Source: Octopus sinensis
Taxonomy: Eukaryota
DNA length: 64,000 nt
NCBI RefSeq assembly: GCF_006345805.1
Contig: NC_043003.1
Coordinates: 6,820,001 to 6,884,000, forward strand
Reading direction: 5' to 3'
How positions within the stretch are numbered: the stretch's first letter is position 1; every line of letters begins with the position of its first letter. Shown here piece after piece: positions 62,301-63,164 of this stretch. The position numbers and the translations under genes were made by a program. The notes under the pieces are model-generated. The model was not told where the DNA came from, ran no database searches, and worked only from the letters and a program-made list of their open reading frames with translations.

Positions 62301-63164
62301 TTGTTACCTTTTGTTATGTTCTGAATGATCTCAGAATTCAACCAGTTAGTTGCCTACATAATGTTGCTATCTTAGTAATATGGACATGGAACAATGCAGA
62401 ACCCCATGGTCCCGTGTGTTCTAATAGTAATCGTTTTGTAGGTCAATACTGGAGTGCTTAGAACTTGTCAGCATTTAATTGCATATCGTTTTCTTCCGCC
62501 TACTTGTTTATTGCAGTCAAATTATTCTGTAGAGGCATCTTCAGGGTCAATCGATGCTCAGAATAAAGTGTACAGTCCAAAGACAAAACCAAAAATGACC
62601 TGCAATTAGTTTAAACCAAGGACACAAGAGATTTTGTCCAAATCCTTAAGTACATGGCCTCATTTTACTTTCATCTCTCTTTCATATTAGAGATAGGTGG
62701 AGGCGCAATGGCTCAGTGGTTAGGGCAGCGGACTCGTGGTCGTAGGATGGCAGTTTCGATTCCCAGACCGGGCGCTGTGAGTGTTTATTGAGCGAAAACA
62801 CCTAAAGCTCCATGAGGCTCCGGCAGGGGATGGTGGTGATCCCTGCTGTACTCTTTCACCACAACTTTCTCTCACTCTTACTTCCTGTTTCTGTTGTACC
62901 TGTATTTCAAAGGGCCGGCCTTGTCACTCTCTATGTCACGCTGAATATCCCCGAGAACTATGTTAAGGGTACACGTGTCTGTGGAGTGCTCAGCCACTTA
63001 CACGTTAATTTCACGAGCAGGCTGTTCCGTTGATCGGATCAACCGGAACCCTCGTCATCGTAACTGACGGAGTGCTTCCATTCCATTAGAGATAGAAAGT
63101 GTAAAGTGAAATAGTTTAATACTTACATTGGTGAGCTTACATCTTCTACAGCATCTTCAAATAT
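2168..63164 (-). CDS. TTC39B: TTC39A/B-family tetratricopeptide repeat protein gene, spliced and partial (continues beyond both window edges)
   Basis: Chain of GT-AG, phase-compatible exons gives about 380-400 aa, including ...[18 protein letters not shown]...SIYHSLSYS...[11 protein letters not shown]...[16 protein letters not shown]...[32 protein letters not shown]...[15 protein letters not shown]...[12 protein letters not shown]. This is collinear with vertebrate TTC39A/B as recalled. The symbol marks the family; A vs B orthology is not resolved. Confidence 0.93.
3050..3720 (+). mobile_element. RTE LINE 3' end fragment with UTR and (GAT)n tail
   Basis: [21 protein letters not shown], followed by the shared 3' UTR. 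Confidence 0.75.
3886..3977 (-). CDS. TTC39B: TTC39 exon, 92 nt ([30 protein letters not shown])
   Basis: Acceptor ttactatttcag, donor TG|gtacgt; [15 protein letters not shown] signature. Confidence 0.96.
4171..4230 (-). CDS. TTC39B: TTC39 exon, 60 nt ([20 protein letters not shown])
   Basis: Acceptor ctttattttcag, donor GAG|gttggt; matches GSLVLFYHARIELLKGNLEE. Confidence 0.9.
4570..4637 (-). CDS. TTC39B: TTC39 exon, 68 nt ([22 protein letters not shown])
   Basis: Acceptor gtcttgtttag, donor gtaact; phases 1 and 0. Confidence 0.9.
4866..5695 (-). mobile_element. RTE LINE 3' end fragment with UTR subrepeats and tail
   Basis: ORF 5364-5558 ([17 protein letters not shown]); (CAT)n at 4866. 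Confidence 0.75.
6157..6540 (-). mobile_element. Family C short repeat: RTE 3'-UTR-derived (truncated LINE ends or SINE), (GAT)n tail, ~55-bp internal subrepeats
   Basis: More than 20 copies on both strands, e.g. 2497-2650+, 2757-3005-, 7740-8172+, 8580-8810+, 21336-21485-, 23790-24097+, 27130-27503+, 27855-28260-, 35566-36100-, 38040-38230+, 42230-42493+, 45590-45870+, 48200-48698+, 50498-50805-, 51134-51445-, 51606-51925+, 61832-62080-, 63711-64000-. The same sequence follows the RTE ORF ends. Confidence 0.85.
7340..7700 (+). mobile_element. R4/Dong-like LINE C-terminal fragment (CCHC knuckle to REL endonuclease)
   Basis: [24 protein letters not shown], then [11 protein letters not shown]...CLLID. 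Confidence 0.7.
8927..9038 (-). CDS. TTC39B: TTC39 exon, 112 nt ([37 protein letters not shown])
   Basis: Acceptor cttaacag, donor G|gtaagt; phases fit both neighbours. Confidence 0.93.
9298..9530 (-). mobile_element. tRNA-head SINE family B (~230 bp)
   Basis: Copies at 17675-17910 (+), 19636-19820 (-), 20344-20565 (-), 23225-23452 (-), 25908-26302 (-, tandem pair), 54049-54262, 57431-57662 (+) and 57686-57840 (+). B-box GAGTTCAAATTCC. Confidence 0.85.
10065..10437 (+). mobile_element. Non-autonomous Helitron-like element
   Basis: A|TCTCTATATATATAAACGGC start, (TG)n, and a terminal 16-bp-stem hairpin TAGCACTATGACTCGG-TGATG-CCGGGTCATAGTGCTA at 10400-10436. Confidence 0.5.
11349..11677 (-). 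mobile_element. tRNA-head SINE family D (~330 bp)
   Basis: Head GGCGCATGGCTCAGTGGTTAGAGC...GAGCTCGAATCCC. Copies at 26405-26735 (-), 36267-36597 (-) and 42494-42769 (+, internally deleted). Confidence 0.85.
12420..12835. repeat. (TA)n-rich microsatellite cluster (one of many: 11678, 37540-38040, 45690-45800, 46230, 56120, 58390)
   Basis: Directly visible. (CTA)n at 26740-26812 and 63645-63710, (TAGA)n at 46598-46648 and (CATA)n at 42790-42860 are also present. Confidence 0.9.
12840..13145 (-). mobile_element. Additional tRNA-head SINE-like repeat
   Basis: GGTTTGATTCCC B-box followed by TTCTTGAGCAAGGCA, as in family D; single copy in this window. Confidence 0.5.
14262..14327 (-). CDS. TTC39B: TTC39 exon, 66 nt ([22 protein letters not shown])
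   Basis: Acceptor ctctatttccag, donor gtaata; matches MLSLLPARIIRLLEFIGFSGNR. Confidence 0.95.
15014..15527. repeat. Compound (GGT/GAT)n trinucleotide tract, ~510 bp
   Basis: Directly visible; a shorter sister tract lies at 14382-14508. Confidence 0.95.
15580..16718 (-). mobile_element. RTE-clade LINE fragment (linker plus RT N-terminal half)
   Basis: ORF 15627-16775 contains [44 protein letters not shown]. Its first ~20 aa come from an adjacent SINE fragment. Confidence 0.9.
16974..17073 (-). CDS. TTC39B: TTC39 exon, 100 nt ([33 protein letters not shown])
   Basis: Acceptor gtcttttacag, donor gtatgt; matches the FEGGVKLGSGAFNL motif. Confidence 0.95.
18848..18980 (-). CDS. TTC39B: TTC39 exon, 133 nt ([43 protein letters not shown])
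   Basis: Acceptor cattacag, donor AA|gtatgt; highly conserved TTC39 block. Confidence 0.96.
21780..22135 (+). mobile_element. RTE LINE fragment including the Cys/His finger
   Basis: [17 protein letters not shown]...[28 protein letters not shown]...FVCGR. Confidence 0.8.
22249..22637 (+). mobile_element. tRNA-head SINE family E with a 13-bp target-site duplication
   Basis: TSD ATATTCTCTGTGT at 22236-22248 and 22638-22650; A-box TGGCCCAGTGG, B-box GTTTCGATTCC. Confidence 0.9.
25644..25773 (-). CDS. TTC39B: TTC39 exon, 130 nt ([43 protein letters not shown])
   Basis: Acceptor gttttttccag, donor G|gtaaaa; phases 0 and 1 fit both neighbours. Confidence 0.92.
25908..26302 (-). mobile_element. 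Two tandem SINE family B copies
   Basis: Duplicated GGGGACAAACAAGG...ATCGACCC...GGCGGAATTTGAA blocks. Confidence 0.8.
28580..29160 (+). mobile_element. 3' end of a CR1-like LINE with (ATT)n tail
   Basis: [25 protein letters not shown]...[13 protein letters not shown], followed by a UTR and (att)n. Confidence 0.8.
29335..29650 (-). mobile_element. R4/Dong-like LINE restriction-like endonuclease C-terminus
   Basis: [19 protein letters not shown]...[13 protein letters not shown]...VPVIV..LG, with frameshifted continuation to [12 protein letters not shown]. Confidence 0.8.
29740..29815 (-). CDS. TTC39B: TTC39 exon, 76 nt ([25 protein letters not shown])
   Basis: Acceptor ctccttatatag, donor gtaagt; aligns without gaps to AKESMYHALGYSTIVVLQAVLTFEQ (recalled). 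Confidence 0.93.
30035..30427 (-). mobile_element. Non-autonomous Helitron-like element
   Basis: Minus strand: A|TCTTTATATATAAAAG ... CCCG-AGCAACGC-CGGG hairpin, 8 nt, CTAG|T. Inserted between A and T with no TSD. Confidence 0.75.
30430..30960 (+). mobile_element. RTE LINE C-terminal fragment
   Basis: Homologous to the other RTE copies ([29 protein letters not shown]). Confidence 0.7.
31898..32005 (-). CDS. TTC39B: TTC39 exon, 108 nt ([35 protein letters not shown])
   Basis: Acceptor ctttttcag, donor TG|gtgagt; conserved LNLFLNNKF motif. Confidence 0.95.
34400..34552. repeat. 74-bp-arm foldback (5-nt loop, 3 mismatches) containing a minimal hammerhead-like motif on each strand
   Basis: Arms 34400-34473 and 34479-34552 compared by eye. 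Confidence 0.9.
34478..34515 (+). ncRNA. Candidate minimal type I hammerhead ribozyme motif (Penelope-type)
   Basis: CUGU-CCGAUGA-AUG GCAA CGG-GAAA-C UCAGA G-UA-ACAG. Stem I pairs and there is a GUA triplet, but the core has U4C and the stem II base is mismatched. Confidence 0.45.
35223..37295 (+). mobile_element. Mariner transposon relic with TIRs and TA target duplication, internally deleted and interrupted by SINEs
   Basis: TA|TTGGGTCATCCCATAAATAATGTGG...CCACATTATTTATGAAATAACCCTA|TA; N-terminus [13 protein letters not shown]; C-terminus [30 protein letters not shown]. Confidence 0.85.
38430..40392 (+). mobile_element. 5'-truncated CR1-clade-like non-LTR retrotransposon (RT plus C-terminus), few disruptions, (AACT)n tail
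   Basis: Motifs [77 protein letters not shown] across ORFs 38938-39795 and 39792-40301; tail at about 40366-40392. Confidence 0.9.
40393..40815 (+). mobile_element. R4/Dong-like LINE fragment downstream of RT
   Basis: [14 protein letters not shown]...[19 protein letters not shown] motif. Confidence 0.7.
41347..42179 (+). mobile_element. Internally deleted mariner element with ~65-bp TIRs
   Basis: TIRs (GATCAATAAG...AAAGCAC..AG.GTGAAGC) at both ends. Transposase N-terminus: [12 protein letters not shown]...SGRP...RRIPIREL...SYGSVQSII...SAKFVPK. The catalytic half is missing. Confidence 0.85.
42880..44220 (+). mobile_element. RTE LINE 3' part (RT end, C-terminus and subrepeat-containing 3' UTR)
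   Basis: [50 protein letters not shown], continuing into the UTR shared with the abundant (GAT)n-tailed short repeat. Confidence 0.85.
44234..44470 (+). mobile_element. Short mariner-derived fragment
   Basis: TA|TTAGTTTGGTGCATAATTATTGCGGATTTT TIR-like end plus a decayed [12 protein letters not shown]...IIDEVA...IHNEL segment. Confidence 0.55.
44560..45520 (+). mobile_element. Penelope-like element relic (RT C-terminal linker, GIY-YIG endonuclease, 3' pseudo-LTR)
   Basis: FN...[17 protein letters not shown]...[15 protein letters not shown]...C...IYEAEV...[17 protein letters not shown]...YVW.LK...[10 protein letters not shown], with several stops. Confidence 0.85.
46703..46800 (-). CDS. TTC39B: TTC39 candidate alternative first coding exon ([32 protein letters not shown] + AT)
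   Basis: First in-frame ATG after an upstream TAA, in unique non-repeat sequence. Donor AT|gtaagt; phase 2 fits the exon at 32005. Confidence 0.6.
46801..47130 (-). promoter_or_regulatory. Putative 5' UTR / internal promoter region of the alternative TTC39 first exon
   Basis: Unique, comparatively GC-richer and CpG-containing sequence with pyrimidine-rich CT tracts directly upstream of the ATG at 46800. No TSS data. Confidence 0.35.
47160..47935. repeat. Tandem array of four ~175-200-bp units built from TG/TA microsatellite blocks
   Basis: Anchor GGCTACGTGTG recurs at about 47203, 47399, 47573 and 47771. Confidence 0.85.
48750..50873 (+). mobile_element. Composite Helitron-like element with nested microsatellite and SINE insertions
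   Basis: 5' TC..CTATATAAAACTGAAATG; 3' hairpin ACCCGC-GCGTAGA-GCGGGT followed by CTAG at 50870-50873. Whether the two ends belong to one element is inferred. Confidence 0.5.
49110..49350. repeat. Tandem array of five ~45-bp units
   Basis: Unit (TG)nTTCTATATATAAATATGTATATATAATGTA. Confidence 0.9.
52790..53125 (-). mobile_element. R4/Dong-like LINE N-terminal-region fragment
   Basis: I...[16 protein letters not shown] followed by a decayed PW..KRK, resembling the pre-RT TN.L.YAAA..V...PPW.RR region. Confidence 0.5.
53154..53585 (-). mobile_element. SINE family A copy
   Basis: Reverse complement of the 707-1120 repeat. Confidence 0.85.
54880..55135 (+). mobile_element. RTE LINE APE endonuclease N-terminal fragment
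   Basis: [32 protein letters not shown] (WNV...DV..LQE-type motif), then RF.G.KG.RYKL. Confidence 0.75.
55416..55820. repeat. Long inverted repeat, ~170-bp arms around an AT-rich spacer
   Basis: Arms at ~55416-55590 and ~55645-55820 are reverse complements with about 3 differences. Confidence 0.9.
56336..56450. repeat. 49-bp-arm inverted repeat
   Basis: Arms 56336-56384 and 56402-56450, 2 mismatches. Confidence 0.85.
56823..57225 (+). mobile_element. SINE family A copy
   Basis: Full-length copy. Confidence 0.85.
57431..57840 (+). mobile_element. Two adjacent SINE family B copies
   Basis: Both begin AAGGC(G/A)GTGAGCTGGCAGAA. Confidence 0.8.
58417..58582. repeat. 49-bp-arm inverted repeat overlapping a perfect 32-bp palindrome
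   Basis: Arms 58417-58465 and 58534-58582 (2 mismatches); AAAACTTTTACCTTAATTAAGGTAAAAGTTTT at 58460-58491. Confidence 0.85.
59120..61745 (-). mobile_element. Degenerate RTE-clade LINE, ~2.6 kb (endonuclease end, RT, Zn-finger-like insert, C-terminus, 3' UTR)
   Basis: Collinear broken ORFs: [59 protein letters not shown]; many stops and frameshifts. Confidence 0.88.
62697..63084 (+). mobile_element. SINE family E copy with an 11-bp TSD, ~30 nt from the microexon donor
   Basis: TSD ATTAGAGATAG at 62686-62696 and 63085-63095; nearly identical to the 22249 copy. Confidence 0.9.
63127..63164 (-). CDS. TTC39B: TTC39 38-nt coding microexon ([12 protein letters not shown] + AT), phase 0 to 2
   Basis: Acceptor cctttattcacag, donor AT|gtaagt. 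Peptide resembles DVFEDALETISI near the N-terminus of human TTC39B (recalled). The end phase fits the exon at 32005 (AT|A = Ile). Confidence 0.8.

What the first reader, a model, noticed from the sequence alone, without database searches (positions are those of the whole stretch)
63127..63164. FFAT-like motif on a 38-nt microexon 31 kb upstream, apparently interchangeable with an internal first exon
Seen: a 38-nt exon (cacag | ATA TTT GAA GAT GCT GTA GAA GAT GTA AGC TCA CCA AT | gtaagt) that is too short for the ORF track. It encodes I-F-E-D-A-V-E, matching F2, D4, A5 and E7 of the FFAT consensus EFFDAxE that binds VAP MSP domains at the ER (established). It resembles DVFEDALE in human TTC39B (recalled). 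Its end phase and last bases (Pro + AT) equal those of the internal exon at 46703, so either can splice onto exon 32005. Inference: promoter choice toggles between a VAP/ER-tethered and an untethered TTC39 isoform.
Basis: partly seen in the sequence, partly recalled or inferred. Interest (0 to 1): 0.72.

Follow-up and report, generated by a model that had tools for sequence, protein, structure and literature searches.

The report
Octopus TTC39 microexon carrying FFAT-like motif
The 38-base exon is a real coding exon of the octopus TTC39 gene. It carries the octopus version of a short motif that, in the human relative TTC39B, binds the ER protein VAPB; a second start exon makes a form without the motif, and I found the same layout in six other animals read here, including a brachiopod, a starfish and an acorn worm.

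Summary
The window is Octopus sinensis DNA (100% identical to CM016865.1), with a TTC39 gene on the minus strand. The 38-nt exon at 63164..63127 encodes [12 protein letters not shown](I). It is already part of RefSeq isoform X2 (XP_036360368.1: MAASEVGRTKQDNCSD|[12 protein letters not shown]|ITPEN…). The exon at 46800..46703 is the start of isoform X1 (XP_029638641.1). Both join exon 32005 in the same phase.

The motif is the orthologue of the published human TTC39B FFAT motif (VFEDALE, VAPB partner). Its F-x-D-A-x-[E/D] skeleton recurs at TTC39 N-termini across the bilaterian hits retrieved. It lies in a predicted disordered tail.

The same layout can be read from DNA in Argonauta, Haliotis, Lingula, Asterias and Ptychodera: a first exon with an acidic tract, a motif-core microexon, one or more internal first exons without the motif, then the shared exon. 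In a decapodiform cephalopod the two forms are seen as RNA-derived contigs.

Two caveats remain. The octopus motif scores weakly (3.5 suboptimal elements, poor acidic flank). VAP binding and tissue-specific promoter use were not tested.

Verdict: a new member of a known kind. The conserved on/off layout is the moderately interesting part.

The parts
63127..63164 (-). 38-nt coding microexon (phase 0 in, phase 2 out). It encodes [12 protein letters not shown](I), which holds the 7-residue core of the FFAT-like motif. It is exon 2 of RefSeq isoform X2.
   Evidence: Sequence and splice sites. Exact match to P0124/XP_036360368.1 and to O. vulgaris CAI9725201.1. Against Argonauta, the 27 nt encoding IFEDAVEDV are 89% identical, versus 32-44% for distal intron. 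It is the only six-frame hit to the family pattern in the window.
63165..63204 (-). Conserved acceptor and polypyrimidine flank of the microexon
   Evidence: 75% identical to Argonauta and 95% to O. bimaculoides over 40 nt. Intron further out is 44% identical to Argonauta.
63087..63126 (-). Donor (gtaagt) and conserved downstream intron flank of the microexon
   Evidence: 60% identical to Argonauta over 40 nt, versus 32% further downstream. The GTAAG donor is invariant.
46703..46800 (-). Coding part of the alternative internal first exon (isoform X1). The ATG is at 46800. It encodes [32 protein letters not shown](I), has no FFAT-like motif, and ends in phase 2.
   Evidence: Sequence. It is the N-terminus of P0001/XP_029638641.1. 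An in-frame stop lies upstream at 46989. A positional counterpart with ATG, open frame and phase-2 GTAAGT donor exists in Argonauta (L006 26276).
31898..32005 (-). First exon shared by both isoforms. It encodes (I)[35 protein letters not shown](C) and begins the Iml2/TTC39 domain.
   Evidence: Pfam PF10300 starts at residue 31 of the spliced model.
2168..29815 (-). Ten further TTC39 coding exons inside the window: 29815-29740, 25773-25644, 18980-18848, 17073-16974, 14327-14262, 9038-8927, 4637-4570, 4230-4171, 3977-3886 and 2326-2168. The gene continues beyond position 1.
   Evidence: Exon model built. Its translation is 100% identical to P0001 over the shared part. PF10300 E = 2.3e-120.

Best explanation
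The 38-nt exon is the second coding exon of the FFAT-bearing isoform of the single octopus TTC39 gene, which RefSeq calls '39A'; in the hits retrieved only the vertebrate proteins named TTC39B keep the motif, not those named 39A.

Shown:
- Transcription of this isoform starts about 3.8 kb upstream of the microexon, 2.9 kb outside the window. That first exon encodes MAASEVGRTKQDNCSD and lies head-to-head with an Asterix (PF03669) gene, with the two ATGs 336 bp apart.
- That exon splices in phase 0 to the microexon, which supplies the motif core I-F-E-D-A-V-E. The microexon then splices across 31 kb to exon 32005.
- A second start exon at 46800 has its own ATG and joins the same acceptor in the same phase. 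It gives a protein with an identical TPR body but no motif.
- The motif lies in a predicted disordered tail, 13 residues before the first helix of the solenoid.
- It is orthologous to the human TTC39B FFAT motif.

Inferred:
- The motif docks the protein onto the MSP domain of VAP at the ER surface, through F2 in the hydrophobic pocket, D4, A5 and E7.
- Choice of start exon therefore decides whether TTC39 can be held at the ER.
- Because the octopod acidic flank is poor, binding is probably weaker than in most relatives, or depends on phosphorylation of the flank Ser/Thr.
For: Exon and isoforms. First exon and neighbouring gene: (window identical to L005 12954-76953).

Human precedent: the review PMC9213790 lists the TTC39B-VAPB FFAT motif VFEDALE, and a second review repeats the VAPB/SCAP link.

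Conservation of the motif: 73 of 130 retrieved homologues match at the N-terminus, and others carry near variants. The core composition was tallied. The 27-nt FFAT-coding island is 89% identical between Octopus and Argonauta.

Disorder: AlphaFold2 gives pLDDT below 50 for residues 1-25, with the first helix at residue 36.

Alternative start: an X1/X2 pair is also modelled in O. bimaculoides. Argonauta has a counterpart exon. In a decapodiform, RNA-derived intron-less contigs of both forms diverge exactly at the shared-exon junction.

The same exon order and phases can be read from DNA in Lingula, Haliotis, Asterias and Ptychodera. Isoform pairs with and without the motif are also modelled in Littorina, Schistocerca, Palaemon and turtles.
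Against: The octopus motif scores 3.5 suboptimal elements in the 2012 scheme. In that study, motifs lacking 2.5-3 or more elements did not target in yeast.

Position 3 is Glu or Gln in every regex-selected TTC39 motif aligned here, and His, Val, Ala or Tyr in the variants, never Phe; none of these is the optimal Phe of position 3.

No octopus RNA evidence and no binding data were available. The RefSeq isoforms are predicted models. The primary paper on TTC39B-VAPB was not held, so I could not check whether the human motif itself was mutated.

The motif-less first exons of different phyla show no sequence similarity to each other, so they may have arisen independently.
Confidence: 0.72

Rival explanations
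1. The exon and motif are real and conserved, but the conserved F-[E/Q]-D-A-x-E peptide serves a partner other than VAP. Alternatively, in octopods it no longer binds VAP usefully. The switch would then control something other than ER tethering.
For: Position 3 is fixed as Glu or Gln in the regex-selected set, and a hydrophobic residue two positions after the core is common (36 of 46). Neither is part of the FFAT definition. The octopus score is 3.5 and the flank charge index only 2.5. The octopod flank (QDNCSD) has lost most of the acidity kept in decapodiforms (EEDSSD) and other molluscs.
Against: The conserved skeleton (F2, D4, A5, acidic 7, acidic flank in most species) consists of the residues that define FFAT. 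The human orthologous motif is listed as the VAPB-binding element. The location in a disordered tail fits a docking motif.
Confidence: 0.2
2. Only the motif-bearing isoform matters. The 46.8-kb 'first exon' isoform is transcriptional noise or an annotation by-product, so there is no real toggle.
For: X1 is a predicted model. Its N-terminal peptide has no domain or recognisable motif. Its upstream region has no CpG enrichment (observed/expected 0.46, versus 1.18 at the X2 start). The alternative N-termini of different phyla are not alike.
Against: The ATG, open frame and phase-2 donor are kept in O. bimaculoides (84% amino-acid identity) and in Argonauta at the same relative position, about 16 kb after the microexon. 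Motif-less first exons sit at the equivalent place in five other lineages. The decapodiform motif-less form was assembled from several RNA runs.
Confidence: 0.08
3. The match is a chance FFAT-like string in an intron and not an exon.
For: None beyond the short length.
Against: It matches annotated proteins of three Octopus species exactly or nearly so, and an Argonauta model. It is an island of conservation with conserved splice sites. The chance expectation is 0.02 per window.
Confidence: 0.005

Closest known systems
Human TTC39B N-terminal FFAT motif (LEADED-VFEDALE-TI; VAPB partner; Hsieh et al., J Hepatol 2022, as listed in PMC9213790)
   Same: Same protein family (PF10300). Same place, in the N-terminal tail before the TPR solenoid. 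Same skeleton, x-F-E-D-A-x-E. Vertebrate TTC39B hits retrieved here carry it too: NFEDAFE, SFEDAYE and CFEDAYD.
   Different: The octopus flank is far less acidic (charge index 2.5 against 4). Position 1 is Ile rather than Val. Binding has not been tested. RefSeq names the octopus protein '39A'. In the vertebrate hits seen here, proteins named TTC39A lack the motif.
Canonical FFAT motifs of lipid-transfer proteins (OSBP/ORPs, CERT, Nir2): EFFDAxE in an acidic tract
   Same: F2, D4, A5 and E7 are present, and the motif sits in a disordered cytosolic segment.
   Different: Glu replaces Phe/Tyr at position 3, Ile replaces an acidic residue at position 1, and the acidic tract is weak. The score is 3.5, above the 2.0-2.5 range at which targeting was seen in the 2012 study. 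TTC39 has no known lipid-transfer domain.
Long/short isoform pairs of ORPs made from alternative promoters, where the short form lacks the N-terminal targeting parts including the FFAT motif (for example ORP1L/ORP1S; from my own knowledge, not checked here)
   Same: An internal promoter yields a protein with the same C-terminal body but without the VAP-docking motif.
   Different: In TTC39 only a tail of about 30 residues differs. The motif core sits on its own microexon of 29-38 nt.
Yeast Iml2 (founding member of PF10300, needed for inclusion-body clearance)
   Same: Same domain family.
   Different: Not examined here. I have no evidence that Iml2 has an FFAT-like N-terminus.

Membership tests
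FFAT / FFAT-like motif (binds the MSP domain of VAP) | Aromatic Phe (or Tyr) at core position 2 | tested here: met
   Phe (TTT at 63161-63159). F43/Y3 in the 46-sequence alignment (the members were chosen with a regex, so this is partly circular).
FFAT / FFAT-like motif (binds the MSP domain of VAP) | Asp/Glu at position 4, small Ala/Cys at position 5, acidic residue at position 7 | tested here: met
   D, A and E in octopus. D46, A46 and E32/D14 across relatives, although the regex would also have allowed S at positions 5 and 7.
FFAT / FFAT-like motif (binds the MSP domain of VAP) | Phe/Tyr (or at least a hydrophobic residue or His) at position 3 | tested here: not met
   Glu in octopus. E33/Q13 in relatives, with rare H, V, A or Y variants. 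The human TTC39B motif also has Glu here and is still listed as a VAPB-binding FFAT.
FFAT / FFAT-like motif (binds the MSP domain of VAP) | Acidic residue at position 1 (the least constrained position) | tested here: not met
   Ile in O. sinensis and Argonauta, Val in O. bimaculoides. The 2012 study found most residues tolerated here except Lys.
FFAT / FFAT-like motif (binds the MSP domain of VAP) | Acidic tract in the six residues upstream (charge index 3-4 or more) | tested here: not met
   QDNCSD gives an index of 2.5 and a penalty of 1. It is encoded by exon 1 outside the window. Most relatives have 4-5.5.
FFAT / FFAT-like motif (binds the MSP domain of VAP) | Overall no more than about 2-2.5 suboptimal elements (Mikitova & Levine 2012, Table S2) | tested here: not met
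   Score 3.5. My re-implementation reproduced 5 of 5 published control scores. Human TTC39B scores 2.5 by this scheme and 2.0 by the 2016 algorithm according to the review.
FFAT / FFAT-like motif (binds the MSP domain of VAP) | Lies in an unstructured, cytosol-exposed segment | tested here: met
   AlphaFold2 gives pLDDT below 50 and no secondary structure for residues 1-25. The motif is at residues 17-23 and the first helix starts at 36. Cytosolic location was not tested.
FFAT / FFAT-like motif (binds the MSP domain of VAP) | Key residues specifically conserved in orthologues relative to their neighbours | tested here: met
   The F-x-D-A-x-[ED] skeleton is kept from molluscs to vertebrates while flanking residues vary. 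At the DNA level, the core is 89% identical and the 3' part of the same exon 27% identical between Octopus and Argonauta.
FFAT / FFAT-like motif (binds the MSP domain of VAP) | Physical, motif-dependent binding to VAP | not testable with these tools
   Needs a pull-down or affinity measurement.
Iml2/TTC39 family (Pfam PF10300) | Significant match to the family profile over most of its length | tested here: met
   E = 2.3e-120. Profile positions 4-357 of 467 are covered by the part of the gene that lies in the window.
Alternative first exon (alternative promoter) rather than a cassette exon | Own start codon, closed upstream frame, use as the 5' end in transcript models, and mutually exclusive joining to the same acceptor | tested here: inconclusive
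   ATG at 46800, in-frame stop at 46989, and use as the N-terminus of XP_029638641.1. The start of transcription itself could not be seen, because no octopus RNA or CAGE data were reachable. Decapodiform RNA contigs have different 5' leaders for the two forms.

The most novel reading that the evidence does not exclude
TTC39 genes carry an ancient two-start switch dating to the last common ancestor of protostomes and deuterostomes.
- An upstream start is often shared head-to-head with the ER-membrane-protein gene Asterix. It gives exon 1 (Met plus acidic tract) and a 29-38-nt microexon with the VAP-docking core.
- One or more internal starts skip both exons.
- Cells would thereby set the ratio of ER-dockable to free TTC39.

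The layout would have been kept for more than 500 million years even though the motif-less leader peptides themselves are not conserved. I found no description of this in the papers searched: only one paper in the library holds both 'TTC39' and 'FFAT'.
Probability: 0.45. Interest if true: 0.55.

Novelty: new member of a known kind. Interest (0 to 1): 0.4.

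Why it matters
Per two reviews read here, TTC39B acts on hepatic lipogenesis through VAPB and SCAP; from my own knowledge it is also a human lipid locus, and a medaka study ties a paralogue to carotenoid coloration.

If the VAP-docking motif is switched on and off by start-site choice in animals as far apart as octopus, brachiopod, starfish and acorn worm, the ER-docked and free forms probably do different jobs. That is testable in any of these systems, and in mammals, with isoform-specific knock-outs.

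For genome annotation, this is a clean example of a functionally loaded microexon of 29-38 nt that ORF-based scans miss.

For the octopus itself the finding adds little. Both isoforms are already in RefSeq.

Tried and rejected
- Two of the three word-indexed protein searches returned nothing because the queries were short (49 and 90 aa). The planned search for octopus RNA-derived fragments spanning the junction therefore failed.
- The primary paper on TTC39B-VAPB (PMC8766887) is not held. What was actually mutated in the human motif rests on a review table and on my memory.
- P0124 is not on record in the contig index, because only the longest product per gene is kept. The locus was reached through P0001 instead.
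- I first mis-mapped locus L005 onto the window and placed the Asterix gene inside the 63-47 kb intron. An exact string match corrected this. Asterix lies upstream of exon 1, outside the window.
Nothing rests on it. The final exon model was checked against Pfam and against P0001.
It is not conserved in O. bimaculoides or Argonauta, and the two peptides are unrelated.
- A medaka ttc39bl paper that mentions isoforms concerns a different splice event and does not mention FFAT.

Full report
**1. What is in the sequence**

On the minus strand, 63164..63127 reads ttcacag|ATATTTGAAGATGCTGTAGAAGATGTAAGCTCACCAAT|gtaagt. It is 38 nt long and open in one frame only. It encodes [12 protein letters not shown] and leaves two bases (AT) for the next exon.

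The exon at 32005 begins tttttcag|A ACA CCT GAG. Either upstream exon therefore completes an Ile codon and continues [10 protein letters not shown]….

The pattern that turned out to define the family motif, [FY][EQ]DA.[ED], occurs once in all six frames of the window, at this exon. About 0.02 occurrences are expected per shuffled window.

**2. The gene**

I then read the splice sites and assembled eleven further exons between 32005 and 2168.

The spliced product matches Pfam PF10300 (Iml2/TTC39) at E = 2.3e-120. It is 100% identical to 'tetratricopeptide repeat protein 39A isoform X1 [Octopus sinensis]', XP_029638641.1 (P0001). The window is identical, base for base, to CM016865.1 of assembly GCA_006345805.1 (L005 12954-76953).

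**3. Both N-termini are already modelled**

P0001 starts [32 protein letters not shown]|ITPEN, which is the 46.8-kb exon.

Its 90% cluster also holds XP_036360368.1, isoform X2 (P0124). That protein starts MAASEVGRTKQDNCSD|[12 protein letters not shown]|ITPEN, which is the microexon.

The cluster also holds the same X1/X2 pair from O. bimaculoides and the motif-bearing form from the O. vulgaris annotation. An Argonauta hians model begins …IFEDAVENVAVV|TPEN.

**4.

It lies at L005 10001-10048, about 2.9 kb beyond the window end and 3.7 kb upstream of the microexon. It reads ATG GCC … AGC GAT|gtaaga and ends in phase 0.

It supplies the flank of the motif, QDNCSD. This is only weakly acidic.

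Its ATG lies 336 bp from the ATG of a divergently transcribed Asterix gene (PF03669). That interval is CpG-rich (observed/expected 1.18, against 0.51 in bulk sequence). The region upstream of the 46.8-kb exon is not CpG-rich (0.46).

**5. Is it the known FFAT motif?**

[quoted passage not shown]. A 2025 review repeats the VAPB/SCAP link. The primary paper is not held. The octopus core IFEDAVE differs from the human core only at positions 1 and 6, the two least constrained positions.

- **Distribution.** Among 130 retrieved homologues, 73 carry [FY][EQD]D[AS].[EDS] in the N-terminal tail after an acidic run. They include molluscs, annelids, a nemertean, a bryozoan, insects, crustaceans, a tick, a sea urchin, a hemichordate, amphioxus and vertebrate TTC39B. 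Lingula's X2 form, read later from its cluster, carries it too.
- **Variants.** Several others carry near variants such as FVDALD, FHDAYE, FADAME and FYDAVE.
- **Vertebrate TTC39A.** The hits named TTC39A lack the motif.
- **Alignment.** In a 46-sequence alignment the core is F43/Y3, E33/Q13, D46, A46, x, E32/D14. The members were picked with that regex, so only the absence of the permitted alternatives is informative.
- **DNA conservation.** The 27 nt encoding IFEDAVEDV are 89% identical between O. sinensis and Argonauta. The rest of the exon is 27% identical, with a 3-nt deletion that keeps the frame. The 40-nt splice flanks are 60-75% identical and the distal intron 32-44%.
- **Disorder.** AlphaFold2 gives pLDDT below 50 and no secondary structure for residues 1-25, with the first helix at residue 36. 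The motif sits where a docking motif should.

**6. How good is the motif?**

I re-implemented the Mikitova-Levine 2012 table and reproduced five published control scores.

| Motif | Suboptimal elements |
|---|---|
| Octopus | 3.5 |
| Decapodiform VYEDASE | 3.5 |
| Human TTC39B | 2.5 |
| Haliotis, Lingula, Asterias, Ptychodera, Schistocerca | 2.0 |
| Biomphalaria, Patella, Mytilus | 1.5 |

The octopus penalties are 1 for the flank, 1 for Ile at position 1 and 1.5 for Glu at position 3. In the 2012 study, motifs lacking 2.5-3 or more elements did not target in yeast.

By sequence, then, the octopus motif is a marginal FFAT. Its claim rests on orthology, not on its score. Flank Ser/Thr (S in O. 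sinensis, T in Argonauta, C in O. bimaculoides) could add charge if phosphorylated. That is speculation.

**7. The toggle**

The 46.8-kb exon has its own ATG and an in-frame stop 189 nt upstream. In O. bimaculoides it is 84% identical at the protein level.

In Argonauta an ATG-initiated open frame (MSTPEVCHTDCDEDKHEKSV…) lies at the same relative place, about 16 kb after the microexon. It ends …CCA AA|GTAAGT, again in phase 2.

In a decapodiform cephalopod, intron-less contigs assembled from RNA runs carry either MADSDAKEVVEEDSSDVYEDASEEVTTPV| or MSLPSS…DDFTLG|. Beyond that point they share the same sequence. The two diverge exactly at the equivalent junction, both with two bases carried over, and their 5' leaders differ.

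**8. The layout is much older than cephalopods**

I read genomic DNA under the annotated isoform pairs. The order found was:

- exon 1 (Met plus acidic tract, phase 0);
- a motif-core microexon (phase 0 in, phase 2 out);
- one or two internal first exons without the motif (phase 2);
- the shared exon.

This order is present in Lingula (32-nt microexon), Haliotis (32 nt), Asterias (32 nt) and Ptychodera (29 nt, with two internal starts).

In the two deuterostomes the intron lies one codon later, so the microexon begins at Phe-2. The motif-less leader peptides share no similarity between phyla.

Isoform pairs with and without the motif are also modelled in Littorina, Schistocerca, Palaemon and turtles.

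**9. Assessment**

It is supported by orthology to a published VAPB-binding motif and by conservation of both the motif and the alternative-start layout.

Octopus VAP binding and regulated promoter use remain untested, and the octopus motif is weak by score.

The exon and both isoforms are in RefSeq, and the motif is known in human TTC39B. This is therefore a new member of a known kind.

I did not find the conserved on/off architecture across bilaterians described in the library. Only one paper holds both 'TTC39' and 'FFAT', and none of the TTC39B isoform papers addresses it. This is the part worth following up.

Noticed in passing
Outside the window: L005 900-9664 (O. sinensis), upstream of TTC39 exon 1. 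Also L006, L007, L008, L009 and L011.: An Asterix gene (PF03669, about 105-110 aa) lies head-to-head with the motif-bearing first exon of TTC39 in O. sinensis, O. bimaculoides, Argonauta, Haliotis, Lingula and the hemichordate Ptychodera. In O. sinensis the two ATGs are 336 bp apart. A decapodiform RNA contig even merges the two transcripts (L001). Asterias instead has an RPB5 gene there. This looks like an old divergent gene pair, possibly sharing a bidirectional promoter.
   Followed up: partly
window 63135-63140 (-): The microexon contains an internal GTAAGC, 24 nt into the exon (GAT|GTAAGC). If used as a donor it would give a 24-nt exon that is out of frame with exon 32005. Argonauta lacks this string (GTTGCA).
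   Followed up: no
window 15627-16775 (-): A 382-aa open frame inside a TTC39 intron looks like a reverse-transcriptase fragment of a non-LTR retroelement (…[13 protein letters not shown]…[12 protein letters not shown]…[13 protein letters not shown]…).
   Followed up: no
window, many places on both strands (for example 2689-3060, 3605-3742, 8524-8730, 21303-21446, 27297-27440): A high-copy interspersed repeat gives recurring pseudo-ORFs such as '[12 protein letters not shown]' and 'NPCQHGK(Q/R)(T/M)LNDDDDDD' in the introns.
   Followed up: no
window about 46590-46650 (-): A (TATC)n microsatellite starts about 50 nt after the donor of the internal first exon. It is also present, in shorter form, in O. 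bimaculoides and as a T-rich relic in Argonauta.
   Followed up: no
window 4631-4638 (-): Tandem acceptors 6 nt apart (tttag|GTTTAG|GT) precede exon 4637-4570. The RefSeq protein uses the upstream one (…VLGLGDGD…). Use of the downstream one would delete Leu-Gly in frame.
   Followed up: no
window 31898/29815 (-), split codon TG|T: Cephalopods (Octopus, Argonauta and the decapodiform) have Cys in …RLEPC…. Many other TTC39 proteins retrieved have Trp there (…PW…), though His, Phe, Cys and Arg also occur in other molluscs.
   Followed up: no
L011 10001-10057 (Ptychodera flava exon 1): Exon 1 of the acorn-worm gene carries a second, partial copy of the motif (KEEFEDGPDD) just upstream of the acidic tract, ahead of the microexon-encoded FEDACDE.
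   Followed up: no
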